Source: Pelomyxa schiedti
Taxonomy: Eukaryota > Protista > Evosea
NCBI GenBank assembly: GCA_020536535.1
Contig: JAHLWZ010000636.1
Coordinates: forward strand, 124,001 to 188,000
DNA: 64,000 bases
Direction: 5' to 3'
Under the pieces are notes generated by a model. The model saw only the letters and a program-made list of their open reading frames with translations. It was not told where the DNA came from and ran no database searches. The translations under genes were made by a program, and so were the position numbers. How positions within the stretch are numbered: the first letter of the stretch is position 1; the number at the start of each line of letters is the position of its first letter. This document shows, in pieces, positions 28,925-45,527 of this stretch.

Positions 28925-30281
28925 TCAAGGCTTCACAAAAAGACCCTGAATCCATACACGGTACATAGTGATTTTTCTTTTCCTGTTGAGGAGTTCTCTT
29001 GTGTCATAAGCAATGTTTCCAATCGTGAAATTGCAGTCTGTGAAGAATTTCCCTAGGGACTCTGTGTTGTAGGTTGCGTTAGACAATCTGACGGGAATAG
29101 CAAAGCCATCTCACCAATAGAAAAGAAATGAGCAACAGTGCCGTCGCCACGCAAGTAGACATTCTCACTCAGTTTCCTGTTTTTCTTGGAAACAAACCGC
29201 ATCTGGGCAAGGTCGTAGAGCCCATAATCTCTTATGAATATCTTTCCTCCGGGAGCTAAAACTTCCCAGAGGTTGCTGATGACGGTATTGAGTTGATGCG
29301 GAAGTATAGCAGATAATGTGAAGACGATCACTATAACATCAATGCTGTTTCTTGGAATTGTTTCCAGAAGTACTGGAGGCAGGGGCTGCGTAAGGTCACA
29401 CACAAAAGGTTTGCAACGAGAAGAATCGAACTTTTCATGTTTCTATAAAGTTAGGAGCGGGGGGAATGGAATGAGCGCAACTCAAAGAGGTCGCGAACTT
29501 TACCTGGAGAATATCTATGGCCCGTGGAGAGCAATCACATCCAAAGAAGTGACACTCGGGAAGAAGAGCCATTAATGGCAGGAGAGTGTTTCCAACACCA
29601 CACCCTGCTTCAAAAATCTTGAATTTATTTGCTATGGTACTGTCTATATTAACATATCTTAACATCCCATTAACATTAAGCACTTCCTTAGGAGGGGCAA
29701 ATAAATGTAAAAAGAAGAATCCATACCCTTGTGCGAGGAGGCAAAGCCGCTATCTCAGGGAAGCTGTGGGCCAAGTAATTGCGGTCTTTGAAGAACTTTG
29801 CTTCGAAGTGGTCGTAGAAGGTCCGCCAGGACCCGGCCGAGTCGCGCTCGATCTCCGCGAGGCGGTCGGCGCCCACGTCCACGTCGCCGTCGGCCGAGGA
29901 CTCGCGCGCCGCGATGGCCCTGGCCGCCGCCTCGGCCCGCACCACGTCCCACGGTATCTCCGCCCACGTCACGTCCGTCCTCCGCGGCCTCACCCGCTCC
30001 CTCTCCCTCTCCCTCTCCGCCTCCCCGTCCCTGCCCCCGTCGGTTTCCTCTCTCCCGCCCTCCTCCTCGGTGGCTGTGGCAGAAGCAGCCGCGGTTGTGG
30101 TGGTAGTGGTAGCGGTAGCGGTAGTGGTGGTTGCGCGTGCCGACCCACTACTCTCTGATGCTGCTTCGTCGGTTGTGGTGGTGGAGTCTGAGGAGGGCTT
30201 CGTTGTAGAGGTGGTGTGCAGGATGTTCCAGAACACGTCGTGGTACTCGTGGTCCTCCGTGTGCGTGTCGTTGGCTGCCAT
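28925..30281 (-). CDS. METTL2: tRNA 3-methylcytidine methyltransferase, METTL2/6/Trm140 family
   Basis: WRTFYDHFEAKFFKDRNYL, FEAGCGVGNTLLPL, GCDCSPRAIDIL, FVCDLT, FTLSAI, FIRDYGLYDLAQMRF, YLRGDGTVAHFF, and NRKRKITMYRVWIQGLFVKP*. Confidence 0.92.
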
Positions 30282-30494
30282 TGTTCTCTGGTCGGCGGGT
30301 GACTACCTGAGTCAGTCCTAATTTCGTGATTGTGTTTCTGTTTTCGTTCCACTCCATTTGTTTTTTTTTTTTTTTTATTCCTTATTTCGCACAGTGCGAT
30401 CAATTGTACGCACGCGGATCGCTACGCGCTCATTGTCTAGGAATCAGCGGCGCCCACTGCGGTTTGGATTACGATAGGAAATAGAAAAGAAACT

Positions 30495-33400
30495 ATGCAC
30501 TCGACACGCAATTTTGCGCTGCTTGTGGTCGTAGCGGTCGCTGCTACTGTCATTTTGTCGTCTACGGCGGTCGTACGTGCGCAGAGCCACCCGGCCACGT
30601 GCGGCGGTTTCGTTCGCGCGGACAGGGTCGCCGCCGGCGCATCGCAGCATCCAGATCTTACAGCTGTAGTGGTGACGTTGTCTCCGGCGTCGGGCGGTGC
30701 CCCTCAGACTGTGGAGTGCACTCCTGTATGCTACCCCCCTTTTTTTTTTTTTTTTTTTTTTTGCCCCTTCTTCTTCTGGCGCACTGACAACATATGATAG
30801 TTTGGGTATTATGTTTTACCAATTGACGAGAATGTGCGAGGAGTTTATTCCATCTCTATAAACGAACCTACAGGCTGGAGTTTTGGTGTGTCCTTGCACT
30901 ATGCTATCAAAACAAGTTGGTAACTAAAACCAAGCTCCTTCTTCTGTTTCTGTGGATTTCTCCAACCCACATGCCTGTGAAAATGATATTGACTTCTCGA
31001 TCATGGGCTTTGCAGTCACAGGCTCGGTTGTTGCGTAGAAATACCTTTCTTTCTTCTCATTGGGTGGACAGGTAGCTGTTACAAACTCTGATAGGTGTCC
31101 AGCAAGTGTATCCCCTTCAGGAGTCGCCGTGCAGTTACTCACTGAACATGGAAGCATCATCTCACGTATCTTAATAATGAATTTATGTGGGACTAACACC
31201 AGTTGCAGAGACCAAAACGACAAATGGAAATTTTGTTTTCACCGAAGTTCCACCAGGAGTATATACTTTACAGGTTTCCCTTCCCGGCACAAAATTCCTG
31301 CAGGTTTCCCTTCTGATTCCTGAAGAATGTAAACCCTCATTTGATTTGCAGGATACCATGCAAGTGGAAGTGGTGTGGGGTAATGTTGCTTTAGAGAAAC
31401 CATTTGAGATTGTTGGCTTCGATATCAAAGGGACAGTTGCTTCTACTGACAAGGAATACATTGGAGGGGTTGAACTAACATTATACGATTCTACCAAGAC
31501 ACCAGGTACCTTTTTGCTTGAAAGAAAAAAACCAAAAAAATTGTTTTACACTGAACTTTAGTTGCACAAACATTTTCAAAGCAAACCACTGGCGAGTTCA
31601 TCTTTGAGAGCGTTTCTTGTGGTCAGTACACTATAATACCACAGTACAAAAGTGGAGCAACTGTGTACAATTTGAACCCATCTGAACTCCCTATATCTGT
31701 CACATTCGGTTTGCATTTTATTCGCTACTCCCTGATAACACCATCTAGGACGAGTAGTATTAGACAAACCTTTTATTGTTGTGGGCTTTTCTATTTCTGG
31801 TATGCACAAAAAGCTGTCCCTTTTTTTTCATACCGTGTCAGGTCGAGTATTGAACAGTGAACAATCACATGTGGGAATTGAAGGGGTTTCTGTAAGTTTT
31901 GATGGCACACCAGCTGCAACAACAGATTCCGACGGGTTTTTCCTTTTACTTTTTCTTCATCACTTCTCAACCAATCTGCAGAAGCTACACCTTAGAGCAA
32001 GTCACATCTGGCAAGCATGATATTACAGCAAGTCTTCCTCACCATGGCTTTTCTTCAATAAAGGGGTTACACCTTACCCCAAATTCGGGATCTCTTCCAG
32101 ATATTATTGTTTCTAGGTAATCTCTCTTTATCTGATTTGTTGATTGACCTTACTAGTTATGACGTGTGTGGGATTGTTACACTCCATAAAACCCCAGCCT
32201 CATTCAGTGTAACATCTATTGGTGTTCAGCTTTTTTCGAGTTCATCGAAAGCCAAACCAAAAACAATGTAAACATGTCCCTTCACCCACCTCTTTGATTG
32301 ATGCAACACAGCTATGTCAAATCTACTGGTGAATTCTGCTTTGAGAGTGTTCCCAAGGGGGAATACAGAATTGCTCCTGTTCAGACATCCTCCAGTCCTG
32401 TTCAGTTGCTCCCTTCTTCCCTGACAGTGAATGTTGACAAGCCAGTTCTCAACTTGAAATTCACTCAAGTTTCTTCAATTTATTGGCTAATTCGTTCATT
32501 AAACGTTTTCTAGAGTCTTTGGGCAATCTCAGGCCACATTGTTGTTCTCGAACCAGAATCAGCCCACCCCGCTGATTTGAAAATTACTATGTACCCAGCC
32601 ATCATAAAAATCCTTGTACTTTCCTAATCTAATATTAAGGGAAGGACCAGCTTCTGCAACAGCCACCATCACCCCAGATTTCAAGTTTTCTTTTACCGGA
32701 CTTCTGTCTGGTACCTACAAACTCCAAGTTGCCCAAGTTAAGGGCTGCTATTGCTGGTCTGAAAATGAGATCAATGTCAAAGTACTGTGTTCTTCTAATC
32801 ATTCCTCGCCAACTGACATATCTTTTCATTAGGTCTCTAATGGCAATGTGGAGGGAATCACTTTCATACAACATGGATTTTCTGCCAATGTTGATATTTC
32901 CCATCCATCTTCTGGTTGTTCTTCTCTCAATCTTTTTTCTATCTAATATCTCTTCAGTTGTTGCCAGTAACAGTTTAAATACAATTACCAAAAATCTTAC
33001 ACGAGGTCTCAACAGACTTTGTTTACCTTCTACAGGTATAGCAAAATTTTGTTAGGTTATTTCACTGGCAAACACTGTAATTGCAGGTGACTGGTCAATG
33101 ACCCTTAGTTCTTGTGCCCTTTTTGGCAGTGCTCCTTCATTGGGGATTAGTCACCTTTCCTGCCCCTCGTTATCTCTCAAGGCGTCTATGATTCTTGTGC
33201 AAGGCTCTGTGCACTTTGCTGGAATCCCAGGTGGACCTCAAGACCACCCCGTGAATGTCAGAATGTAGTTTACATAAAAGCAATCAAGTGCCTAAATCTA
33301 TTTCAGGGAGAGCATTTTGTCAGATGGTACACCAGAGAAGATGTCTGAGACTAGTGGTTAGTCCACCATTTTCCCTCTGACTTTTCTTTCTATTCTCATC

Positions 33401-35159
33401 TTTCTTCCACATTATAGTTTCCCAGTCAACAGCAACATATTCCACAAGTGGAAAAATTGGGGAGACAATTAGATTTACTCCCCAATCTTCAAAATTACTT
33501 TTTACCCCTCCATCACGCACAATCACCGTAACATCTAATGAATGCCCTGTCACAGTGCTACCATTCGAGGCATCTCTTGGAGTGTATGCGCGAAGTACCT
33601 ACATTGCCACTTCTAACTTAAAATAGGTTCCTACAAGGGCATGTCGTTCCTGCAATGGAGGGAGTGGAAATGACCGTCTCTACACAGGGCACAGAATCTA
33701 CTTTCACTGTTCTTACCGATAAACTGGGCAGCTATTCTGCAGGGCCTTTACCCAGTGGAATATCTTACTCTGTGGTGTGTACCGTTGCTTTTTGAGGTTG
33801 TTTTCACATCTCTAAGTCTTGTAACATGGCTGGCTTCAATTGTGTTCCATCGGGAGACGGAAACTTTCAAATTACGCAATTGATCAACTTAAGGGTTCGT
33901 GTAATGGAACCTGGTGAACCAGCCCAACCTCTTGCTGGGGTTCTTGTTTCAGTCTCCGGCATGCAGTTCCGCAGCAATAACTTTACACTCTCCAATGGAG
34001 CCGTGTTTTTGACTGGTCTGACACCTGGTCAATACTTCATTCGACCTGCTATGAAAGAGTATACCTTCACTCCCTCAACAATGGTACAGCACTTTTCGTT
34101 CCCAGTAAAAACTTAAAAAAAAAAAACCAAATAGCAAGTCGTGCTGGAGGAGGGGAAGGAGGATACTGATGTTTTATTTGATGCCAAGCGCGTTGCTTTC
34201 AGTGTCTTTGGCTCAGTTCATTTCCTAAATGGCGAACCTTTTTCGAATACCGCTGTTTTGGCAACTGCACCTGTAACCACATGCCTATCCCCCATTTTTT
34301 TTCTAATTTGTGTTAAGGGACATACCGAAGAAGCACACACCGACAGCACTGGACAATACCGAATTAGAGGCTTAGTTCCTAATACACCATACACCATAAC
34401 TCTGAAATCAACCGAAGACAAAGGTACGTTTCTTCACTTTTTACTATGTTAATGCCTTGCAAGGAATTTCACATTTGATGCCCAGCAAACACACTCTCAC
34501 TGTAGGACTTTTGGATAGTCATGGTGCTGATTTCATCGTCGTCACGGCACCAAATGACTGCGTTATATCAGGGACTGTTGATGCTTTACCTGAGGTACTG
34601 CAATATCTCACAGTCACCGCCTCTCCAACCACGGGGGCTGGTGCATCTGTTTCTGCATCACTTGGACCAAGTGACCACTTTGAACTCCACAAGTTGAAGC
34701 CCTTCCAAAAATATGACATCAGCGTTTCTGGTTCTGTACCAATGGGCATGCAGTGTGAGTGTTCCCCAATGCCAGCAACTACTGTTTTAGCAGGAGCTGA
34801 TGGGGCAGTGCACAAAACGCTAGAACTGTCTTATCCATGTGTCTCACATTTGGTATGGAGAATCCAAGAGATCTTTTACTTACACTTTGTAGGAAAAGGC
34901 AATGCAAGAAGAACCATCATCACCAATACTTCCTTTATTATTTTCTATTATTGTAGTCATTGCAGCCTATAACTGGACTGCAGTATGTTTCCCTTGTTAC
35001 CTGGAAAATTGGCTGACACCACCCAAGGTAAAACAAAAAGCTTCACAAACACTTCACCGTTTTGGAGTTTCTCTACCAAAATCCATAAATGAAGCAAAAG
35101 CCTACGCCGACAGTTTCGGAAAACGAGCCCCCAGAAGAGAAAAGAAGTTGAGATCATAA
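30495..35159 (+). CDS. NOMO: Nodal modulator (NOMO)-like type I ER membrane protein with tandem prealbumin/Ig-like domains, multi-exon
   Basis: Signal peptide, CGGFV...VECTP|GYYVLPI...PTGWSF, many beta-rich repeats (TDSTGQYRIRGLVPNTPYTI, GLTPGQYFIRPAMKEYTFTP), a C-terminal TM (LPLLFSIIVVIAAYN) and a basic tail. Confidence 0.88.
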
Positions 35160-35547
35160 ACTCTCCCAGTCCAGTACCACAACCCAAACCCACACGCACC
35201 TCCTCAAAGTAAAAAATTTTTTGTTGAGATGCTTTGCTCAACGGTACTGTAGTAGGGACGAGTAACACCCTATTGTATTTTACTTCTGTGGCAAAAAATA
35301 AAACAGATGGCGCTAGGAGTGGGCCTGGTGAGCAACAGTTTGAATCGCGGCCTGGAAGAAGCTGGAAACACTGGCTCCATCCATGCAGCTCACCTTTTTT
35401 TTGCAGGAGTGTGGTGTGAGGTGGGAAATGTGGGTTTGAACAGTGTTCTAGACAGACAAACCTCGAAGTAGGAGTATTTTTTGTTCTTGTCTTATGCACT
35501 TTCGTGCGTCTTCTGCTGTAACCTGATGAGACCGATGAAGATGAGAA

Positions 35548-36558
35548 ATATCCAATGGGGAGCGCACTTCAAGACCCCCCCACCTTCGAAAAATTCGAAG
35601 TTTTAGAATGGAAATAAAGTTTTGTTGTTTAGCGGGTTAGGTTAGAAGACAGCGATCAGATTTGAGGAAATCCACGAAAAAAGCTGTGAAAAACGCAAAG
35701 TGGAGCGCCAATCAGGATCAACATTGCTCGAACCTATGGAGCCAGCTGCAGAGGATGCGTGGGTAAGTTGCTGCCTTTGTGGAGATGGAGGAGGAGGATT
35801 CTTTGCTGGCAGCACAGAGATTCCAATTAGGAGCTGTTTCTGAGCACAGTGCCACCTGATATTGCATTCCAAACCAGATGAGTAGTTCTTGTGGTTAAAT
35901 TTGGGATATTTGTGAGGATGTTAATGATCTTTTGATTTGCTGCAACTTTGGCATAATATGAAAGAGCCATCAGGTGTGCTGCCTGTGAAAATCACCTATC
36001 AAACTTTGAGGGGAGATCACACTTTTTTTTGATAAAGCACTTTAGTTTGCCATTTTCCAATTCCTTGATGGAGACACTGGGTCCATAATAAATGTGGGTG
36101 ACTAGAAGCACAGTTAGCCAGAACATGATACCCTTTGCAAATCCGTTAAGAAGAATGGCAATATATGTTGCTGGTACCCAGAGTTTTTCAGCAAGAGTTT
36201 CAATCAAATCAAGAAAAAGCTGAGATGAAGTTTGAGTGCATTGTGGTTGCACTTGGTTTGCAGGGTTTTCAGGGCATCGTGTCTTATTGTGCTCAAGAGA
36301 ACAACAGATACTACATCAACCCTTTTGGGTACGAGAACACTTAACAGGGCTGCTTGACTTCCCCCTAATATTAAATCAATAAACAACACAACTTTCAGTC
36401 ACCACTTTGTTGATGGCATCCATGGCACCCTAAGTGGTTTTTCAAAAGGAAAAAAAAAAAGAGCAGATTTCTGATAACCTCCAATCTCTGGAGGGTCAGC
36501 GCTTAGCGCACTACTCATAAGTAGGTTGGTTGTTTGAGACTGTGCAGCCATTGGATAT
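35548..36558. mobile_element. Non-autonomous TIR element (MITE-like), copy 1
   Basis: Ends ATATCCAATGG (35548) and CCATTGGATAT (36548-36558) are perfect inverted repeats. Internal blocks recur in copy 2. Confidence 0.65.
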
Positions 36559-36615
36559 GTGGCTGTGTCCCAAATCTTCCTTTCTTCAAAAAAGAAAAGG
36601 GAAGAATATGGGACA

Positions 36616-38028
36616 ATATCCAATGGGGATATTGCGCACTTCTAGACCCCCCCCACCTTCGAAAAATTCGAAGTTTTAGAATGGAAATAAAGTCTAGCTT
36701 TTCAATCCCAAACCAGACGAGTAGTTCTTGTGAAATTTCAGGGCATCATGCCTTATTGTGCTCAAGAGAACGACAGATACCACATCAACCCCTTTGGGTA
36801 TGAGAATGCTTAACAGGGCTGCCTGACTTCCCCCTAATATTAAATCAATAAACAACACAACTTTCAGTCACCACTTTTGGGGGTCAAATAACTCCAATTT
36901 CTTGGTTTTTGACACAACAATGCGACAATTTCGATTTTTTGACACAACGCTGTAGATTGTATCATTCTGCGAAATCTGTTACTAACATGTGGTCTGGAGC
37001 CAAGGTTTTAACGCTTTCGGGGTTGTTTTGGCTGAGGTGCTGTGGCAGTCTCCTTTGGAATGGGTGTCACTTGTGAAGCTGAAGGTCTGTGTTTGTGTGG
37101 CTGTTGCTGAGGAACAGCTTGTGCTTGCCTTTGAATGAAGGCACTGCTGTTTTTGTTGTTTCCATGTTTCCAGTTTTTGCAGCCCAGTCAGAGATGGCTT
37201 TCCTTTGTGCATTTGCAGATGACTTTCCTGCAATCTGTAAGTCTGTGTCAGTGAGATGCAGTGCAGCTTGTAATGTCAGCAGCAATTCAGAAAATAAATA
37301 TGACCAAAGAACAGCTGCCCTGTGCACACTTTCAGTCAATTCGTGCACAATCTTCAATCTTCTCTTTCTGTGATGCATAAAATGGTTCATTTTATGGTCT
37401 TGCTTCACCAGAGAAGAGATTACCCCTTGTGGAATTCCAATTTTCAGAAGAAAGCCTTGGTGGAGGAGGATTTGGGGTGTCAAAGATGTCGAAATGTGAA
37501 GCCAATGTTATAGTTTGGGACAATGGTGACTGTGGATGTGTGTTAGACCTCAAAACCATCATGCCACAACTTCTTATGCACTACCACATACCACAACAGT
37601 TTGCCCACAATCAAACAGGTTTTTTGTAATCAATTTAGGAGAATGATACAATCTGGTCCAGGTGCTGGAAAATTGTACTTTTTTTTTCCAGCACCCGTCT
37701 GGTTACCGCCACTTTTTGGGTTTCCTCAGTCCTAATGCCTCCTTTTTCACTGGGAACCAAGGGAAACACTGCTCACAGCTCTGTCCTACCTGCTCCCCCT
37801 GGTTCAACACGATTTTGACACCATCTGGACCAGATCCAGAATTTTCTTGTGTTTTTTGGGTAGAGTTGGTTTGACCCCCAACTTTGTTGAGGGCATCCGT
37901 GGTTTTTCAAAAGGAAAAAAAAAAAAGAGCAGATTTCTGATAACCTCCAATCTCTGGAGGGTCAACGCTTAGCGCACTACTCAAGAGTAGGTTGGTTGTT
38001 TGAGACTGTGCAGGTACCCATTGGATAT
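36616..38028. mobile_element. Non-autonomous TIR element, copy 2 (internally deleted and interrupted by a nested insertion)
   Basis: Same termini, ATATCCAATGG (36616) and CCATTGGATAT (38018-38028). Blocks 36615-36693, 36708-36732, 36736-36877 and 37881-38028 match 35547-35620, 35869-35893, 36267-36408 and about 36404-36558 in the same order. Confidence 0.7.
36878..37880. mobile_element. About 1.0-kb nested insertion with TG...CA ends, 11-bp TIR and 5-bp TSD (solo LTR or small TIR element)
   Basis: Ends TGGGGGTCAAA and TTTGACCCCCA, flanked by ACTTT at 36873-36877 and 37881-37885. The empty site ccACTTTgttga is present at about 36402-36413. Confidence 0.8.
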
Positions 38029-38090
38029 CACAGCCACCCCCTTCCTCCAGAAGCTAAAGTTCTAAATAGTAAAATCCTTTGTTCGTGGAA

Positions 38091-41000
38091 ATGCAACAAA
38101 ACGACGTCGTCGGCGACGAAGAGGCGCAACAACCGACCAGTACCACGACCAAGACCCGGTGCGATGTGTGCACGAGGTTGCTGGAGGATCCCGTGGCGCT
38201 GGACTGCGGCCACTTCCTCTGCTCCCTCTGCGCCGAGGCAGCCCTCGCCGGCGCCCTCGTGGCCTCGCGCTTCCCCTCTGCCCCGCGCGCCCCTCCGTCT
38301 CTTGGCGCACCTTGCACACCCCCTCCTCCCACTCCTCCTCTCGCTCCTGCCGCCTGTCCCCCAGGGACCACGGCCTCGGCCACCCCCGACTGCCCAGCAC
38401 CACCACCACAGGCCTCCCTGCTGCCCCTCGCCGCGGCGGCCGCTGCTACCACAACCACCACACGCAGCGAAACCCCCGCCATGGACGACGACGAGGGCCC
38501 AGTCGAGGTCCCCCTCGCGTGCCCGCACCAGGGCTGCAAAGGTGGTGCAACGGTCGTCCGCCTCCGCGTGACGGCAGGCAGCGGGGAGCCCCCGTCCCAG
38601 GGCTCATCCGACGCGCCCAACACGCCCATGCAGGCACCAGGAGGCCCCGAGGAGTCGCCCAGCCCGAGCCTGGCACTGAGCCGGGGAATGAGGCGGGACT
38701 CGGCCCTGGCCGGGAGTGTCCGCGACCACATCGCCAGGGTGCGGGCGGCGCAGTCGCCGCTGTGCGAGTTCGCCGCGTGCGCCGACGACTCGCCTTCGGG
38801 GAAGTGCGAGGACGCGACTGTGAGGTGCGAGGGGTGCCGCGGCATGTGCTACTGCAGCGCGTGCTTTGGCAGGTGGCATTCTGGCTCCTCCAAGATGAAG
38901 GCTCATAAGGTAGGAGGCTACTTGTTTCATTTGCAGCTGCGAAGAGGATTGACTGTTTTTGTAGGCAACACCAATCCCCAAAGTGAAATCTCTCAAGCAA
39001 TTTTGTGGAGAGCACCCAACAAAGGAACTTGAGCTGTACTGCGCGGAATCAAACGGTGTAATATGTTCCACGTGCCACTGGTCGTCTGACAAACATACTG
39101 GTCATAGCCACATACCCCTTCACAAGTTCGTTGAATCACAAAAGGCAAGCATGAATGGTAAGTGGTGCCACCTTACATGTCGATACTGATAGTATTATGC
39201 AATGTGTTTTTACCAAGAACGTATTGAAATATTGAAATCCCATTATGGGAAGTGCGGTGCTGCCCTTTCTGCAATTTCCTCTGCCCGAAAGCAGATCCCT
39301 GTGGCATGTTCCCCCTTCAGAGTAAAAATTTCGTGTTTGACCTTGCCATATACAATAAAAGAAAGCTGAAATGAAGATTCTAGAGCTGCACAAAAAGGTT
39401 CTCGAAATGCAAAACACAACAGGTCGGTTGAAGTCACTACTTCACTCACACAAAAATTGCTAAATGAAGAACAACAGAGACAATGTTGCACCTCCAGGAG
39501 CAGGCGCTGATTTGCCACATGACTCAACAAAGAAATCTTCTTTCGTTTTTCTCAGATTCCATGGCCAATGAGGACCATGCTGGGTTGGTGTTTGCTTCCA
39601 GGGCCATCACCAACTTTGTGGATGTATGTCTCCCCGTATCACACATCATTCTTTGACTTCTACATGAAGTGTCTTGACCAAAATTCGAAATTGCTCCTTC
39701 CACTCTCAGTACAGCCCTCTGTTCTTGACGACATCGTTTTCCTAGAGTCTGAGAGAACCACAATTCAAAGAGAATTGTGCACACTTCTCAACACTGTCTC
39801 CAACTTGAAACAGTGAGAGTGTTGTCTGTTCCAAAACTCACTAACAATACCATACCACAACAATAAACAAGGAAACCGAAGGAGGGTTATGTCCAGTGTG
39901 TTGACTGCATGGGTGACTTCAGGATTCTGTGCCAGTCTCCACCTGGAAAAAGTTCGTTGAGACTATTTGTTGATAACCCTTTGATCCCGGTGTCATTCAA
40001 GCAGACGTTTGGGGTTCATTCGCTTCCGAAACCAGACACTCTCGACTGCTCCTCAACCATTTTCTTCGACTTCACACTCCCATCTGATGTGGAGGTCAAA
40101 TTGCCAACAGACGCACAGCCTGACTTGATGGAACTGAAGGAAATTTCACCCAAGCACTTCCACCTCTGGGCCAAGCTGAAAGCAACGAACGAATTGCACG
40201 GAGTCATCAAGTTTGTGATTGGGGATGCCACAGTTCCAAAGTTTGATGTCGTTCCGGGCCATGGTGTTGTCAATCTCCCTGCGATCATCCTCCTCGGTGT
40301 TGGTGTACTACTGCCGTTCAGTTACCTTGTAGAAGAGCCTCTACTGAAACTATTTGCCGGGCTTTCTCTTCAAGCAACGGTTATCCGAGTTGGAGCATGG
40401 AACAGCTGTGCACAGCTTGTTGTGCACTCATCTTCACCCTGCAACTGGCTTTCTCCACTCGGTGTTGCTTTATTGGCATTTGGAGAAACAGCAGGAGAAG
40501 AAGAAACAGGCCTCCTTGACATGTCTGGGCCTGAGTTGGAGGAGATTGGCCTGCATGATGAGATTCAACGAAGATTGAAAGGCTTTCCACTTTCCTCCAA
40601 GTTCCGTGATTTGCCTCAACCTGCACAGATTCCTCCATCTGAGGAGACTGTGAGGCCAAACGGATCCTGTGCTTCTTCTTCTTCGTTATCGTCATCAGGA
40701 GGAAGTGGAGTCGAAAGTGAACTCCGAGAAATGTTGACTCGATCGTCAGTCTTGAAACAGTTTGTTCCCTTCCTCTCCTCCTCCTCCTCTTCTCTGTTTC
40801 AAAACTCATTTTTCCCATTTTTGTCTTCTGTTCCTTCTGTGGAATGATGTCTCTCCTCTCTCCTTTTTTCCCCGATTCTGGATGATGGTGAACAGCAAGC
40901 CACTGTGTGGAAGTTTCCAGTGCATTGACATCATGTGCGACTTCCGCCCAATATGCTCCGGTTCGCACAATGCCAATCTTCAACTGTTCGTTGACAACCC

Positions 41001-42663
41001 AATGCTGATTGCCTCTGTGAAGCAGACTTTCATGCCTCCGAGTGTCCCATCACCGGATGCCTTCTTTGAATCGTACATCTTCTTTGATGTGTCGATTCCT
41101 TCTGGGGCGTCTTCATCTTTTCTGGAAATTCCCCTTGAGCTGGAAAAGGTAATGGAGCTGAAACGCATTTCTATAACGCACTTCCTTATCTGGTGTGAAC
41201 TTTCGACTGACAAGGAGGTCTGGACTGCAGTGAAGTTCGTTTTGGGGAATCCGTTCGCTGGCATAAGCAACGGCACCGTGATTCCTGGATATGGTGTTGT
41301 AGATGTCCCCGTCATCACTCTTCTAGGTGTTTCACTACTGGTGACTGCCCTTATTCCCCAAGAGCAAGTACGCTCATACTTTGTCAAAGCTGCCCCCAAA
41401 GTGGTTGTGCACCAGGTGGCCGCCCGCCACTCGACCATTGGTCAAATAACAGTGCAGCCCCTGGTTCCTTGTGCTTTTCTCTCTCCATTTGCTACTGCTC
41501 TTTGCTCGTCAAATATCGCACCTGATATTGAAGTGATGCCTGATGGCACCCCTCTGAAAGAACTGAAGGACTTCAAATTTCCCTTGATAATGAAGGAAAA
41601 GTTCGGAGCACCCCATCAGGAAACTACAACCAATCTTGCGGAAGAAATTACCATACAATTACCACTCCAATCCGAGAGCCAACCTCATAGGAAACGATTG
41701 CTAAAAATCATTTTACTTGGTGAAAGCGGGTTTGTTTTCTCGTCCAGCCATCGTACTCTTTTCTCACCAAAGATGACAATTTTTTGCCTACAGGGTTGGG
41801 AAGACAACAATAATGACCCAGTGTGCTTGAATGAATCTTTATGGGTACTTATGTGCTCACCCATTTTCATAGATATGTTCAGCATAAAGTTTCTTCCGGG
41901 TACAAGGCCACAATAGGTGCCGATTTCCTTACGAAGGTGTGTACTGTTCTCTTTTCTAGGGTTTTTTTTTCCCGCGTTGTTTTACCACAAGTACAGGAAG
42001 TGGTGATGGTTGACGGATTTATTTCAACGGCTCAGGTATTGCCTCAATTCCCTCATGATTTTTCTGCTTGAGTTCTTACGGATATTAAGATTTGGGACAC
42101 AGCTGGGCAGGAACGATTCCAGTCACTTGGGACTGCATTTTACCGAGGTTGTTCCTTTTACGATCCAGCGGAATTTTAACCAAGCACGAAAAGGTGCGGA
42201 CTGTTGCGTTCTGGTATTCGACGTTACTTGTAAACGAACATTTGAGCAACTTGATTCCTGGTGTTCTGAATTTATTGAGAAATCAGGCAAAGACGGCACA
42301 ATCTTCCCGTTTTTTGTTGTTGGAAACAAAATTGACTCACAAAACAACAGAGAGGTTTTATTTGCTCCTTTTTCAGTACCCACACGCACGCACGCACGCA
42401 CGCACGCAACCTCCTCAAACTGAATAATTATCACACACCTATCCCATGAATCGAACATTGCACAACAGGTAACAACTGAAGAAGCGCAACAATGGTGCAC
42501 AAGGAAAGGACCAAACTTCCACTTCTTCGAGGTTTGTTTGCCCTGTTGCACCCACGAGTTGTTCGCAACCTCAACAAAAAACCAGGTGAGTGGCAAGGAC
42601 AGCACCAACATCGACGCCCTCTTCCAGAAAGCCATGGATCTCACATTCCGATCGAATGCCTGA
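38091..42663 (+). CDS. TRIM-like RING-Bbox-Bbox-coiled coil protein with two duplicated beta-rich domains and a C-terminal Rab7-like GTPase, multi-exon
   Basis: RING CDVC...[12 protein letters not shown]-box [19 protein letters not shown]...HK. B-box [25 protein letters not shown]...HTGH. GTPase [11 protein letters not shown]|VGKT...[12 protein letters not shown]|EV...Q|[20 protein letters not shown]|[10 protein letters not shown]...VVGNKID...FE|VSGK. A GT-AG path was traced through all exons. Confidence 0.8.
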
Positions 42664-42886
42664 AAGGCCACAAAGCCAAACCAAACATCTGAAAATCACC
42701 TGCTCGAGACCCACTGGGAACCATTTAAAAGATGGGGTAAATCCTGAAAAGTTTTAACCGTCATGTGTGTTTCTTAAAAAATAAACACCCTCGAACAAAA
42801 AACCAAACAAAAAAAAACAAAAAGCGGAAACAAAGAAAGCTCAAGCACCGCGACCCGTTTCGGGTGGATAGACAACAACTACATAG

Positions 42887-45527
42887 ATGGGTAAAGATCT
42901 ACGAGGGGTCGAGAGGGGCGCGTGCCGCGAAGAGGACTGCGACTGCGACGCCTACGTTCCGGACGACAACGCGAAAGCGAACAAATGCGACTACTGCGGC
43001 CACTACCCCACTCGACACGTGAATCTCTCCACGCAACCGAGATCTGCCGTCGCCTCGCAAGGTACACCCGACGCGATGGTAACCTCGCCAGCGCAGCCGC
43101 AGCAGCAAGGGGGATGCACCGCCACTAGTACCACTACTAGTAGCAGCTCTTCTGCGTTTACAGGCAGCGCGACGACTCCAGGCACCTCGGCGGCGACTTC
43201 TGCGTTTATGGGCTCCTCGGCTTCCGCGAGTTCTGCGGTTGACACGGCGGCTAAGGTGACTGCCTCTCCTATCAAAATAGACGCTCTTCCTGCTTTCTCT
43301 ATGAGTAGCTCGTGGCCTTTTGCCCCTGCTGCGGTGTCTTCCCCCATGTCGGCAAGCAATGCGGGAGTACCAGTGCAATCACAACCGCAGGCCAACACCA
43401 CCGCATCCACATCGACATCTGCATCTGCATCAGCCACCCCCACACCAATGCAGGGAGTGGTCAGCATGCCGACACCTACTCCTGTTCAGACCAGCCCTTC
43501 CCCAATCACCTCCACAACAACACCGATGCAAACGACCACAGCGGCTCAAGTACCATTCATGCAGTCCCCGTCTCCTCAAACCTCTGCATTTATGACCACT
43601 AGCCCCAGTTCGGCTTCTGCATTTATGGCACAGCCGTCTTATGCCCCCACTGGACCTGGAATGCAATCAGCTTTTATGTCGTCTCCCCCAAGTACAGCGC
43701 CACCTTCTTCAGTTCCAATTCCCTCTGCTACAATCACTACTCCATCAACTTCTCCTACAAGTCAGTGTCCAATGTGTGGGGGATACTTCCCTTGCGATAA
43801 AATTGAGGCACATGCTTCAAACTGCGATGGCACTTCGGCCCCACCTCCATCCAGCACCCCATTAGCTTCATCGACTCCAGCATGGCCCGCAGATGCCGTG
43901 GAAAAACTTGCAGAACAACTACCAAAGGACTTCCCGAAAGCAACAATCCAAGAGATGCTCAACTCTCACCCAGTTAAGGGTGATATGGATACGGTGTTGG
44001 CTATGTTATTTGCTGCTGCAGACCAAATGGCGAAAAGTGCACCACCACCAACTGGTATCCCTACCTTTTTTTTTTTGAAGAACCTTATTGTGAATAGTCG
44101 CAATGGACGAAGAAACAAGGAGAGTAGTTGATCAACTAACAACCCCTACCTTTGAATGTGGTGTTTGCCTTGAGACTTTTCCTGTCACTGGGTATGTTTT
44201 ATTGGTTGCTAAGTTAGTCCCTGAAAACTTTCAGAATGTACACAGTAGACTGTCCCAGTGCTCATCGCTACTGTTTTGATTGCATCTCCCGCTTTATCAC
44301 AATGAAAGTAAACGAAAACGCTGAACTCGTTTGCCCAGCAGCACAGAACACCTGTAAGCATATCCTTGGAGAGGGTGAACTCAAACAGGTAACTTCCACA
44401 ATAACAATTTTGCTGATCTCTCATTAGATTGCTAAAAATGATCCAGAAGGGGGAGTCACTCCAGAAATAATTAAAAAATATGAGGACCAGCAGCTTCTTC
44501 GCGGTATACAGGTATTTATTTCTTTAAATGCTAAATTATTCGTTTACAATTACTAAACAAATAGAGTATCCCGGGTGTTATTGGTTGCCCAACCCCTCAA
44601 TGTCCCAACTGGGTTGTCCCTAATGATACTCGTACGTTTCCCTCGGAGACATTTGTTGTGCTCACTTAATCCAAGGTGCAAAGGAGCGATGTGTCTGTGG
44701 TGCATGTAAGTTTAATTTCTGTTCTCTATGCAAAAAGCTTTACCACTACCATTGTTCTTGCGCTGAGGTCGTATGGGGAGGGTGGGATGTCTTGAACTCC
44801 GACTCACAAGACTGCTAAACGCAGGTTTTCATGTATGCAGAGAGGTGGGTACAGTGGTGCACGACAGGGCGCGCACGTTACAACAGGTTGATGGCATAAC
44901 CTCTTTTTCCCAAATTAATAAACTTCAAGAGGTAAATCAGAAGCACTGGCTCGAATTGCATCCCAGCGGTCTGCGATTGAAAAACGTAATACCGAGCTGA
45001 AAAAGCGCTACGAGGTTTTATTGAAACGATTTGTTTCTCACTGACCTCCTTTAGGACATGGTTGCTGATGAAAAATTCAAAGCTGAAAATGGTCGCCACT
45101 GCCCCAAGTGCAAGCGTGTCATTGTCAAGGAGGGAGGATGTGACTCAATGGTTTGTGGTCGAGATTATCACGGCGGAAATGTGCAGGTAACTACCTACTT
45201 TGCATAGCTCTCAACACTGACCACTTCCAAAACAATTAGGATGGTTGCGGGCACCACTTCAACTGGGAATCGGCCAAGCATTACACACCCGCAGCAGCCA
45301 CAACCCCCGATATCAAGCCTGTGGAAGTTGATATACCAGATATTGCCCGTGAAGTGGTGCACCAGGGAGTGTTCTGTGACAGGTGCAGGCAGGAAATTCG
45401 AGGACTACGCGTGAGTTGCCTTCACTGCCCAGCCCAAGACCTGTGTGAGAGGTGCGAAATTGAAGCAACACCCAAGCATCCACACGACCATGTGTTCAGG
45501 GTGTTTACAAGCCTCAGCGAGTACTGA
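42887..45527 (+). CDS. RBR (RING1-IBR-RING2) E3 ubiquitin ligase with N-terminal Cys-rich knuckle, UBZ-like finger, UBA/CUE-like helix bundle and C-terminal ZZ finger
   Basis: CPMCGGYFPCDKIEAHASNC (UBZ4-like), FECGVC...CPSAHRYCFDC, CPTPQC...CGACKFNFCSLC...HYHCSC, CPKCKRVIVKEGGCDSMVCG...GCGHHFNW, and FCDRC...SCLHCPAQDLCERC...HPHDH. Confidence 0.85.

What the first reader, a model, noticed from the sequence alone, without database searches (positions are those of the whole stretch)
38091..42663. TRIM (RBCC) E3 ligase fused to a Rab7-like GTPase lacking prenylation cysteines
Seen: RING, two B-boxes, a coiled coil, two repeated domains and then a Rab7-signature GTPase ([36 protein letters not shown]). 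The P-loop start shares one ORF (40762-41916) with the upstream domain. The protein ends FRSNA* with no Cys, and G5 is SGK. Established: TRIM23/ARD1 is RBCC+ARF, and Rab7 controls late endosomes and phagosomes. Inference: an independent invention of the TRIM-small GTPase design, potentially a GTP-gated ubiquitin ligase or Rab7 decoy for phagosome or xenophagy control. I know of no described RBCC-Rab7 protein.
Basis: partly seen in the sequence, partly recalled or inferred. Interest (0 to 1): 0.8.

Follow-up and report, generated by a model that had tools for sequence, protein, structure and literature searches.

The report
TRIM-like ligase fused to Rab7 GTPase
An anaerobic amoeba (most likely Pelomyxa schiedti) expresses one 1,219-residue protein that joins a TRIM-type ubiquitin-ligase front end to a Rab7-type membrane-traffic switch through two copies of an orphan domain; I found no description of this combination, and it belongs to a small family whose members carry different Rab types.

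Summary
Splice joints from single-cell RNA contigs define 15 exons (38091-42663, + strand; 13 GT-AG and 1 GC-AG intron). They give one open frame of 1,219 residues: RING, B-box 1, B-box 2, a helical region, two copies of an orphan ~205-residue domain ("D", 39% identical), and a Rab7-like GTPase. The GTPase ends 8-10 residues after its last helix, with no tail and no cysteine. The D2-to-Rab junction lies inside one exon. Overlapping RNA contigs link B-box 1 to the 3' UTR. No single contig spans the whole gene, and the first ~500 nt have no RNA cover.

Three separate Rab exon pieces each rank Rab7/Ypt7 first among solved structures, with Rab9 next. The D domain has no sequence relative outside this organism among 1.84 billion representatives and no fold match. 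It carries a strongly hydrophobic ~19-residue stretch.

New here: the gene belongs to a family. One paralogous transcript has D-D plus a Rab2-like GTPase. Another paralog is RBCC-D without a GTPase. A decayed tandem copy sits beside this gene in another assembly. The scan had already flagged a similar gene elsewhere in this genome.

Function (a Rab-switch-guided ubiquitin ligase) is inference only. Verdict: a real new variant of the TRIM23 and Rab40 design; interest 0.6.

The parts
38091..42663 (+). Whole coding region: 15 exons, 1,219 codons plus a TAA stop
   Evidence: Joints in RNA contigs, splice sites checked, spliced translation has no stop
38091..38909 (+). Exon 1: start codon, RING and B-box 1. 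No RNA cover for 38091-38588.
   Evidence: ORF. Pfam. The allele in L003 differs only by in-frame indels, dN/dS 0.19. RNA contig starts at 38589.
38160..38537 (+). RING: ligands C24..C51, a 92-residue Pro/Ala/Thr-rich insert, then C144-x4-C149 (CPHQGC)
   Evidence: zf-C3HC4 23.2 bits over profile positions 1-30 of 40. TRIM34/TRIM5 RINGs are the best solved matches. Paralog P0002 has the same layout.
38763..38906 (+). B-box 1 (residues 225-272)
   Evidence: ANCHR-like_BBOX E = 7.7e-5, 23.2 bits, below the cut-off of 27. ZFYVE19 B-box match in PDB.
38965..39157 (+). Exon 2: B-box 2 (38992-39108, residues 287-325)
   Evidence: zf-B_box 34 bits against a cut-off of 24.1. Joint 38909/38965 seen in two RNA runs.
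39218..39812 (+). Exons 3-6 (39218-39303, 39362-39422, 39478-39623, 39670-39812): helical region where TRIMs have their coiled coil. Intron 39304-39361 is GC-AG.
   Evidence: Joints. Heptad test weak, 36/500 shuffles.
39872..40759 (+). Exon 7: orphan domain D1 (39873-40493, residues 484-690) and a Ser-rich linker
   Evidence: Repeat comparison. No Pfam family. RNA contigs X1 record 1, X2 record 7 and X3 record 10.
40275..40331 (+). Hydrophobic 19-residue stretch in D1 (residues 618-636), Kyte-Doolittle mean 2.26
40896..41729 (+). Exon 8: orphan domain D2 (40897-41514, residues 780-985), a linker, then the start of the GTPase (41683-41729: first strand and P-loop start). The fusion junction lies inside this exon.
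   Evidence: X3 record 10 covers 40896-41728 and continues through all Rab exons.
41299..41355 (+). Hydrophobic 19-residue stretch in D2 (residues 914-932), Kyte-Doolittle mean 2.27
   Evidence: This is the lowest-confidence part of the AlphaFold model.
41794..42035 (+). Exons 9-11 (41794-41820, 41873-41936, 41997-42035): rest of the P-loop, switch I ([12 protein letters not shown]), strands 2-3
   Evidence: Joints in three RNA runs. All 15 solved matches at E<=0.01 are Rab7/Ypt7.
42090..42147 (+). Exon 12: G3 and switch II ([13 protein letters not shown])
   Evidence: Rab7/Ypt7 rank first, Rab9 next
42194..42354 (+). Exon 13: helix 3 to G4 (GNKID)
   Evidence: Rab7a 8e-15, Ypt7 4e-11, Rab9B 1e-10, other Rabs >=3e-5. 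34 of 51 residues identical to human Rab7a.
42469..42663 (+). Exons 14-15 (42469-42531, 42586-42663): G5 (SGK), last helix, C-terminus FRSNA, TAA stop. No hypervariable tail and no cysteine.
   Evidence: RNA contigs run unspliced past the stop to 42768-42791.
42664..42791 (+). 3' untranslated region, as far as RNA contigs reach
   Evidence: X2 record 7 and X3 record 10

Best explanation
Shown: a single spliced gene encodes a 1,219-residue protein. Its order is N-terminal RING, B-box 1, B-box 2, helical region, two copies of an orphan alpha+beta domain (D) that each hold a strongly hydrophobic ~19-residue stretch, and a C-terminal Rab7-type GTPase. The GTPase keeps all nucleotide-binding motifs, but its hypervariable tail and prenylation cysteines are gone. 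The gene belongs to a family in this organism built on the same RBCC/D scaffold. That family includes a D-D transcript with a Rab2-type GTPase and an RBCC-D gene with no GTPase.

Inferred: it is a TRIM-like RING ubiquitin ligase whose site or timing of action is set by a built-in Rab switch. Switch I and II are nearly identical to Rab7/Ypt7. The GTP-bound module should therefore be read by the Rab7 exchange factor, GAPs and effectors on late endosomes or phagosomes. That would bring, or release, the ligase at those membranes.

Without a lipid anchor, membrane contact would have to come from those protein partners, or from the hydrophobic stretches of the D domains acting as an inserted, non-spanning anchor. 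Paralogs with other Rab types would direct the same ligase scaffold to other compartments.
For: One gene, one frame:
- 14 canonical joints appear in RNA contigs from up to three single-cell libraries, checked on the DNA.
- The spliced frame is uninterrupted.
- X1 record 1 joins 38589-40085. X3 record 10 joins 39977-42768 with 8 introns removed.
- The D2/Rab junction is inside exon 8.
- An independent paralogous transcript (P0001, L001) also reads D-D-Rab in one frame open to its 5' end.

Ligase front end: Pfam RING and B-box matches, TRIM RINGs as the best solved matches, and language-model neighbours that are all B-box/TRIM-like clusters.

Rab7 type: three exon pieces each rank Rab7/Ypt7 first. 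Identity to other Rab types is only 34-40%.

Intact G motifs: read directly from the sequence.

Family with different Rab heads: P0001's GTPase matches Rab2B at 4e-48. P0002 is RBCC-D only.

Constraint: dN/dS is 0.19-0.49 against the allele and the tandem copy.

Hydrophobic stretch: conserved in all D copies, Kyte-Doolittle mean 1.9-2.3.
Against: - No biochemical, localisation or genetic data exist, so every functional step is inference.
- No single RNA contig runs from RING to Rab, and 38091-38588 has no RNA cover.
- The RING's last metal pair follows a 92-residue insert and is C-x4-C, so ligase activity is not assured.
- The coiled coil is not demonstrated.
- The AlphaFold model (pTM 0.69) packs the two halves of D together. 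That argues against a membrane-spanning helix and leaves the hydrophobic stretch either buried or inserted.
- G5 is SGK rather than SAK.
- No Rab tree was made because no reference set could be fetched.
Confidence: 0.55

Rival explanations
1. Same fusion protein, but the Rab module is a decoy or fixed binding module rather than a cycling switch. It would hold Rab7 effectors or regulators, or microbial factors that target Rab7, so that the RING can ubiquitinate them. GTP would be bound constitutively or be irrelevant.
For: The switch regions are nearly identical to Rab7/Ypt7, so the effector surface is kept. Loss of the tail and prenyl site removes the GDI/REP membrane cycle that normally gives a Rab its on/off meaning. 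G5 is altered to SGK.
Against: The catalytic Gln in WDTAGQE and all other G motifs are kept. A pure decoy would not need them. No data separate this reading from the main one.
Confidence: 0.2
2. Two products from one locus. An internal start site gives a free, tail-less Rab7-like protein (or D2-Rab), and the RBCC-D part acts separately. The full-length frame would then be a minor or accidental read-through form.
For: Template-switch-oligo-tagged cDNA 5' ends lie inside the gene at 40701 and 41142. RNA depth is higher over the 3' part in two libraries. In-frame Met codons exist at residues 993 and 1011, upstream of the P-loop.
Against: The two tagged ends differ between cells and lie mid-exon, as expected from reverse-transcriptase drop-off. 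The 3' bias is normal for this library type. X3 record 10 runs from D1 through Rab without a break. The junction is in-frame inside one exon. Paralog P0001 keeps the same D-D-Rab frame. There is no Met close to the P-loop.
Confidence: 0.12
3. A lineage-specific duplicate on its way to decay: transcribed and still open, but with no maintained function.
For: A tandem copy in another assembly (L003 6134-9467) has lost the B-boxes, carries a frameshift in D2 and has a degenerate P-loop. The family is confined to one organism.
Against: The 1,219-codon frame is intact across 15 exons. All splice sites and G motifs are intact. dN/dS is 0.19 against the allele and 0.31-0.49 against the decaying copy. 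It is expressed in three cells.
Confidence: 0.08
4. Artefact: the window or the RNA contigs are chimeric assemblies that join an RBCC gene to a Rab gene.
For: One RNA contig (X2 record 7) does contain a non-canonical, out-of-frame 1,008-nt skip between the two repeats. This shows that such artefacts occur here.
Against: DNA contigs of an independent run cover 40351-42791 in one piece with no joints. RNA contigs from three libraries agree on every canonical joint with 0-2 mismatches. The junction lies within one exon.
Confidence: 0.03

Closest known systems
TRIM23 / ARD1 (class IX TRIM: RBCC + ARF GTPase)
   Same: RING, two B-boxes, a helical region and then a C-terminal small GTPase in one polypeptide. 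This is the only described TRIM with a GTPase (established knowledge; classes listed in PMC3503706).
   Different: The GTPase here is Rab7-type, not ARF. Two orphan D domains lie between the coiled-coil region and the GTPase. TRIM23 is confined to cnidarians and bilaterians, whereas this is an archamoeba, so the fusion is independent.
Rab40 subfamily (Rab + SOCS box, adaptor of a cullin-5 ligase)
   Same: A Rab GTPase and a ubiquitin-ligase module in one protein. Rab40C promotes proteasomal degradation of a partner (PMC4359733, listed; the SOCS/cullin-5 link is established knowledge).
   Different: Rab40 has the Rab first and a small adaptor box after it, keeps a lipid anchor, and recruits a separate multi-subunit ligase. 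Here the Rab is last, has no anchor, and the RING ligase is built in.
Acanthamoeba castellanii F-box / ankyrin / Rab protein (P0039)
   Same: An amoebozoan protein that joins a ubiquitin-ligase adaptor module to a Rab domain.
   Different: It has an F-box (SCF adaptor) and ankyrin repeats instead of RBCC. It has no D domain, and its Rab is not Rab7-type (about 36-40% identity range).
Canonical Rab7 / Ypt7
   Same: Switch I, switch II and the helix 3 to G4 segment are the best matches. 34/51, 18/20 and 15/21 residues are identical in the three pieces. All G motifs are present.
   Different: There is no hypervariable domain and no double-cysteine prenylation motif, which all 210 Rab7/Rab9 sequences in PMC2693434 carry. 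It sits at the end of a 1,041-residue N-terminal extension. G5 is SGK.
Large multi-domain Rabs (Rab44/45/46, RASEF: EF-hand, coiled coil, Rab)
   Same: A C-terminal Rab domain preceded by a long regulatory region that includes a coiled coil (hits).
   Different: Those have EF-hands and no ligase domain. None of the 52 hits carried a B-box or RING.
TRIM37-like subfamily A and class XI TRIMs (TRIM13, TRIM59)
   Same: Subfamily A is the only TRIM group reported outside animals, including one Dictyostelium gene. Class XI TRIMs are membrane-anchored by a hydrophobic segment (established knowledge).
   Different: No MATH domain is present. The hydrophobic stretches here lie inside the D domains, not at the C-terminus, and whether they enter a membrane is unknown.

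Membership tests
TRIM / RBCC | N-terminal RING finger | tested here: inconclusive
   zf-C3HC4 scores 23.2 bits (cut-off 21) but only over the first six ligands. The last pair is C-x4-C after a 92-residue insert. The same layout is kept in paralog P0002. No fold was made of this part.
TRIM / RBCC | One or two B-boxes directly after the RING, B1 before B2 | tested here: met
   B-box 2: zf-B_box 34 bits, above the cut-off of 24.1. B-box 1: ANCHR-like_BBOX 23.2 bits, below the cut-off of 27, with a full Cys/His pattern and a ZFYVE19 B-box match.
TRIM / RBCC | Coiled coil after the B-boxes | tested here: inconclusive
   Residues 327-483 contain few prolines and lie at the right place. My crude heptad score was reached by 36 of 500 shuffles. 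No dedicated predictor was available.
TRIM / RBCC | Placement in a TRIM subfamily by phylogeny | not tested
   Word-based searches with P0002 returned only itself. Language-model neighbours are animal B-box/TRIM clusters, which is a lead only.
TRIM23 / class IX | C-terminal ARF-family GTPase | tested here: not met
   The GTPase pieces match Rab7/Ypt7 first. Pfam gives Ras, not Arf, on exon 13.
Rab7 subfamily | Complete G1-G5 nucleotide-binding motifs | tested here: met
   GESGVGKT, T in [21 protein letters not shown] and SGK (G5 variant) read from the spliced sequence.
Rab7 subfamily | Closest similarity to Rab7/Ypt7 in the switch and subfamily regions | tested here: met
   Three independent exon pieces each rank Rab7/Ypt7 first and Rab9 second. 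The last two exons give only weak Rab9A matches.
Rab7 subfamily | Hypervariable C-terminal domain ending in a double-cysteine prenylation motif | tested here: not met
   The protein ends FRSNA right after the last helix, with no Cys in the last 40 residues. RNA runs past the stop unspliced. All 210 Rab7/9 proteins in PMC2693434 have the motif.
Rab7 subfamily | Placement inside the Rab7 clade in a Rab tree | not tested
   No Rab7 reference sequences could be obtained.
Membrane-anchored (class XI-like) TRIM | Transmembrane segment | tested here: inconclusive
   The Kyte-Doolittle 19-residue mean is 2.26 and 2.27 in D1 and D2, and 1.9-2.2 in paralogs, above the classical 1.6 threshold. The AlphaFold model packs both halves of D together and is least confident at this stretch.

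The most novel reading that the evidence does not exclude
Pelomyxa has evolved a family of membrane-inserted TRIM-like ligases in which interchangeable Rab modules (Rab7-type here, Rab2-type in a paralog) serve as built-in compartment-identity readers. The hydrophobic element of the orphan D domain replaces the prenyl anchor. The Rab7-type member would ubiquitinate targets on phagosomes or on the vacuoles that house the amoeba's obligate prokaryotic partners, only when its Rab module is GTP-loaded. That would be a cell-autonomous way to decide between digesting and keeping an internalised microbe.
Probability: 0.1. Interest if true: 0.85.

Novelty: new variant of a known kind. Interest (0 to 1): 0.6.

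Why it matters
Small GTPases and ubiquitin ligases are the two main ways in which eukaryotic cells label membranes. Proteins that hard-wire the two together are rare: TRIM23 with an ARF, and Rab40 with a SOCS box.

Here the same design arose independently in an archamoeba with a Rab7-type switch. The same scaffold also appears with a Rab2-type switch, which suggests that Rab modules can be swapped onto a ligase scaffold.

This gives a natural test case for three questions. Can a Rab work without its lipid anchor and GDI cycle? Can a Rab domain gate a RING ligase? How does an amoeba that lives with obligate intracellular prokaryotes control late endosomal compartments?

It also adds an RBCC protein outside animals that is not of the TRIM37 type, and an orphan domain with no detectable relative.

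Tried and rejected
- AlphaFold of the D domain from the two in-gene repeats alone gave pLDDT 37 and was unusable. With 8 paralogous rows it reached pLDDT 67 and pTM 0.69.
- Foldseek against PDB and the AlphaFold DB clusters, VIA-align wide and the ESM Atlas shape search gave nothing. The best TM-score was 0.33 and the best Z was 4.4, a generic ferredoxin-like arrangement below the noise level the tool states.
- The ESM Atlas feature search of D2 gave a best score of 0.64, no lead.
- The search for homologous proteins with P0001 and with P0002 returned only the queries. Candidate lists were saturated by chance or low-complexity words, so this says little.
There was therefore no whole-domain search, no Rab tree and no full-length fold. 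I used exon pieces, and in two cases pieces read through in-frame, stop-free introns.
- The 1,008-nt skip in one RNA contig was considered as an isoform lacking most of D2. I rejected it because it has TT..AC ends, 5 nt of microhomology and removes 872 nt of mRNA, which is out of frame.
- A hidden intron in the GC-rich insert of exon 1 was considered unlikely. The region is 66% GC against about 40% in the gene's introns, and the allele in L003 differs only by in-frame indels.
- Cochliopodium and Trichosphaerium were rejected as the source organism. The organism was then identified through the name NCBI gives P0002 and through the SRA run range.
- Searches for the assembly and run accessions in the paper library found nothing.
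Full report
**What is there**

The region is eukaryotic and rich in introns.

I looked for public runs holding window 38000-42900 (4,901 letters, within the operators' limit). This found three single-cell RNA libraries of one sample and one DNA run. Laying their contigs on the stretch gave 13 canonical joints in the joint table and a fourteenth (40759/40896) in the table of pieces.

Checked on the DNA, 13 introns are GT-AG and one (39304-39361) is GC-AG. Lengths are 46-136 nt. Joining the 15 exons gives one frame from the ATG at 38091 to the TAA at 42661-42663, 1,219 residues, ending FRSNA.

**Is it one gene?**

- X1 record 1 joins 38589-40085, from late exon 1 through B-box 2 and the helical region into D1.
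- X3 record 10 joins 39977-42768, covering D1, D2, every Rab exon and the 3' UTR, with eight introns removed.
- These two overlap by 109 nt. X2 record 7 also starts at 39872.
- The DNA run shows the same stretch unspliced, with 40351-42791 in one contig.
- The D2-to-GTPase junction lies inside exon 8 (40896-41729). Splicing therefore cannot separate the two parts.

Limits:
- No single contig runs from RING to Rab.
- 38091-38588 (66% GC) has no RNA cover.
- Two cDNA 5' ends tagged by the template-switch oligo lie mid-exon at 40701 and 41142. I read these as reverse-transcriptase drop-off, but they leave room for shorter isoforms.
- One contig has a 1,008-nt TT..AC skip between the two repeats that removes 872 nt of mRNA out of frame. 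I treat it as an artefact.

For exon 1, the allele in another assembly differs only by in-frame indels and has dN/dS 0.19. This supports coding through the low-complexity part.

**The ligase front end**

- Pfam finds zf-C3HC4 at 23.2 bits (cut-off 21), covering only the first six ligands.
- B-box 1 is a sub-threshold ANCHR-like B-box, 23.2 bits against a cut-off of 27.
- B-box 2 is a clear zf-B_box, 34 bits against a cut-off of 24.1.
- The best solved matches of exon 1 are TRIM34, TRIM5 and TRIM39 RINGs and the ZFYVE19 B-box.
- The last RING metal pair is CPHQGC (C-x4-C) after a 92-residue Pro/Ala/Thr-rich insert. Paralog P0002 has the same arrangement, so it is a kept feature and not an error. 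From memory, the C-P-x-x-G-C form recalls the RING1 of RBR ligases; this is a lead, not a test.
- The coiled coil is not established. My crude heptad score was reached by 36 of 500 shuffles.
- Language-model neighbours of the B-box and helical part of P0002 are all animal B-box/TRIM-like clusters. This too is only a lead.

**The orphan D domain**

- The two copies are 39% identical over 206 residues, E = 2e-38, and match no Pfam family.
- A profile of the two, run exhaustively over 1.84 billion representative proteins, found only three true relatives.
- All three come from one organism. P0002 is named "hypothetical protein Pelo_16846 [Pelomyxa schiedti]". P0003 is from the same assembly, GCA_020536535.1. 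P0001 is from run SRR23919873, which lies in the range SRR23919866-77 given for P. schiedti single-cell transcriptomes in PMC10579272.
- The window is 99.7% identical to that assembly over 6.1 kb. The source is therefore most likely Pelomyxa schiedti, an anaerobic archamoeba with obligate prokaryotic endosymbionts.
- With 8 paralogous rows AlphaFold gave an alpha+beta model with pLDDT 67 and pTM 0.69. Four structure searches found no relative: best TM-score 0.33, best Z 4.4.
- Every D copy has a ~19-residue stretch with a Kyte-Doolittle mean of 1.9-2.3. Its sequence varies between copies but it is always hydrophobic, and it is the least confident part of the model.
- The model packs the two halves of D together. 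A membrane-spanning helix is therefore unlikely. An inserted, non-spanning anchor or a buried helix both remain open.

**The GTPase**

- Residues 1042-1219 carry [29 protein letters not shown] and SGK.
- The helix 3 to G4 exon gives Rab7a 8e-15, Ypt7 4e-11, Rab9B 1e-10 and other Rabs 3e-5 or worse. 34 of 51 residues are identical to human Rab7a.
- The switch I piece gives 15 matches at E <= 0.01, all Rab7/Ypt7.
- The switch II piece gives Ypt7 and Rab7 first, then Rab9, with 18 of 20 residues identical to Ypt7.
- The last two exons give only weak Rab9A matches.
- Identity to every other Rab-type domain fetched is 34-40%.
- The protein stops just after the last helix. The hypervariable domain (26-32 residues) and the double-cysteine motif, present in all 210 Rab7/Rab9 sequences of PMC2693434, are absent.
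- It is therefore a Rab7-derived module, not a canonical Rab7.

**A family, not a one-off**

- P0001 is a transcript contig whose frame is open to its 5' end. It reads D-D-GTPase, but its GTPase is Rab2-like: Rab2B 4e-48, Rab14 1e-43, Rab1 5e-43. It is only 36% identical to ours.
- P0002 is RING, B-box 1, B-box 2, helical region and one D, with no GTPase in its locus.
- In contig JAHLWZ010000836 a tandem copy lies just upstream of the allele of this gene. It has a RING fragment, D1 and a frameshifted D2, its Rab7-like exons include a degenerate P-loop, and it has no B-boxes. The window lacks this copy and has repeat-rich filler at 35375-38020 instead.
- The scan had already noted a [quoted passage not shown] on another piece of this genome (s1-383243). 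I did not examine that piece.

**How it most likely works (inference)**

By analogy with TRIM proteins, the RBCC part would be a dimerising RING ligase. The D domains would be the family-specific targeting or membrane-contact part.

The Rab7-type module keeps the catalytic glutamine and near-identical switch regions. It should therefore still be recognised by the Rab7 exchange factor, GAPs and effectors. With no lipid anchor and hence no GDI cycle, it cannot act as a normal Rab.

It most plausibly brings or gates the ligase at late endosomal or phagosomal membranes. Paralogs with other Rab types would do the same elsewhere. A decoy role fits the same data. None of this has been tested.

**Comparison with known systems**

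TRIM23 (RBCC + ARF) has the same design with another GTPase family. It is limited to cnidarians and bilaterians, and only TRIM37-like TRIMs are reported outside animals (PMC3503706).

Rab40 (Rab + SOCS box; PMC4359733) and an Acanthamoeba F-box-ankyrin-Rab protein (P0039) show that Rab-ligase couplings exist in other forms.

A screen of multi-domain proteins with Rab-like domains gave 52 hits, none with a B-box or RING. Four literature searches found no RBCC-Rab protein. Both the screen and the paper library are limited, so absence is not proven.

**Verdict**

The architectural reading is supported and widened to a family. The functional reading is untested. I rate it a new variant of a known kind, interest 0.6.

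Noticed in passing
window 35375-38020 versus L003 6136-9559: Assembly GCA_020536535.1 (contig JAHLWZ010000836) has a decayed tandem paralog between the NOMO-like gene and this gene: a RING fragment, D1, a frameshifted D2 and Rab7-like exons with a degenerate P-loop. The window has 2.6 kb of repeat-rich filler there instead. This is either a structural polymorphism or an assembly difference.
   Followed up: partly
window 38020-38062; L003 9559-9604: The NCBI gene model behind P0003 ends in ...DITATPFLQKLKF. That tail is encoded by the intergenic stretch just upstream of this gene's ATG, so the model seems to splice the decayed copy's Rab exons onto intergenic sequence.
   Followed up: partly
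   Followed up: no
window 39304-39361: A GC-AG intron, supported by RNA contigs of two libraries. The other 13 introns of the gene are GT-AG.
   Followed up: yes
window 40563/41572: One RNA contig (X2 record 7) skips 1,008 nt between the two D repeats. The skip has TT..AC ends and 5 nt of microhomology, and it is out of frame. It is probably a template-switch or assembly artefact.
   Followed up: yes
window 40701 and 41142: Loose ends matching the SMART template-switch oligo mark cDNA 5' ends inside exons 7 and 8. They are either reverse-transcriptase drop-off or internal transcript starts.
   Followed up: partly
window 42887-44430: The next gene starts only about 100 nt after the 3' UTR. It encodes a Ser/Thr/Ala/Pro-rich protein with a Cys-rich N-terminus and a RING-type finger (zf-C3HC4_IRF-2BP1_2, 30.5 bits, at 44236-44424). 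Two RING proteins therefore lie side by side.
   Followed up: partly
window 29230-35375 (= L003 1-6136): The upstream neighbours are a NOMO1-like multi-domain gene and a methyltransferase gene, according to the Pfam marks on the matching contig. This stretch is 99.7% identical to the public assembly.
   Followed up: no
P0039 (Acanthamoeba castellanii): A 519-residue protein with ankyrin repeats, an F-box and a Rab domain. It is another amoebozoan coupling of a ubiquitin-ligase adaptor to a Rab.
   Followed up: partly
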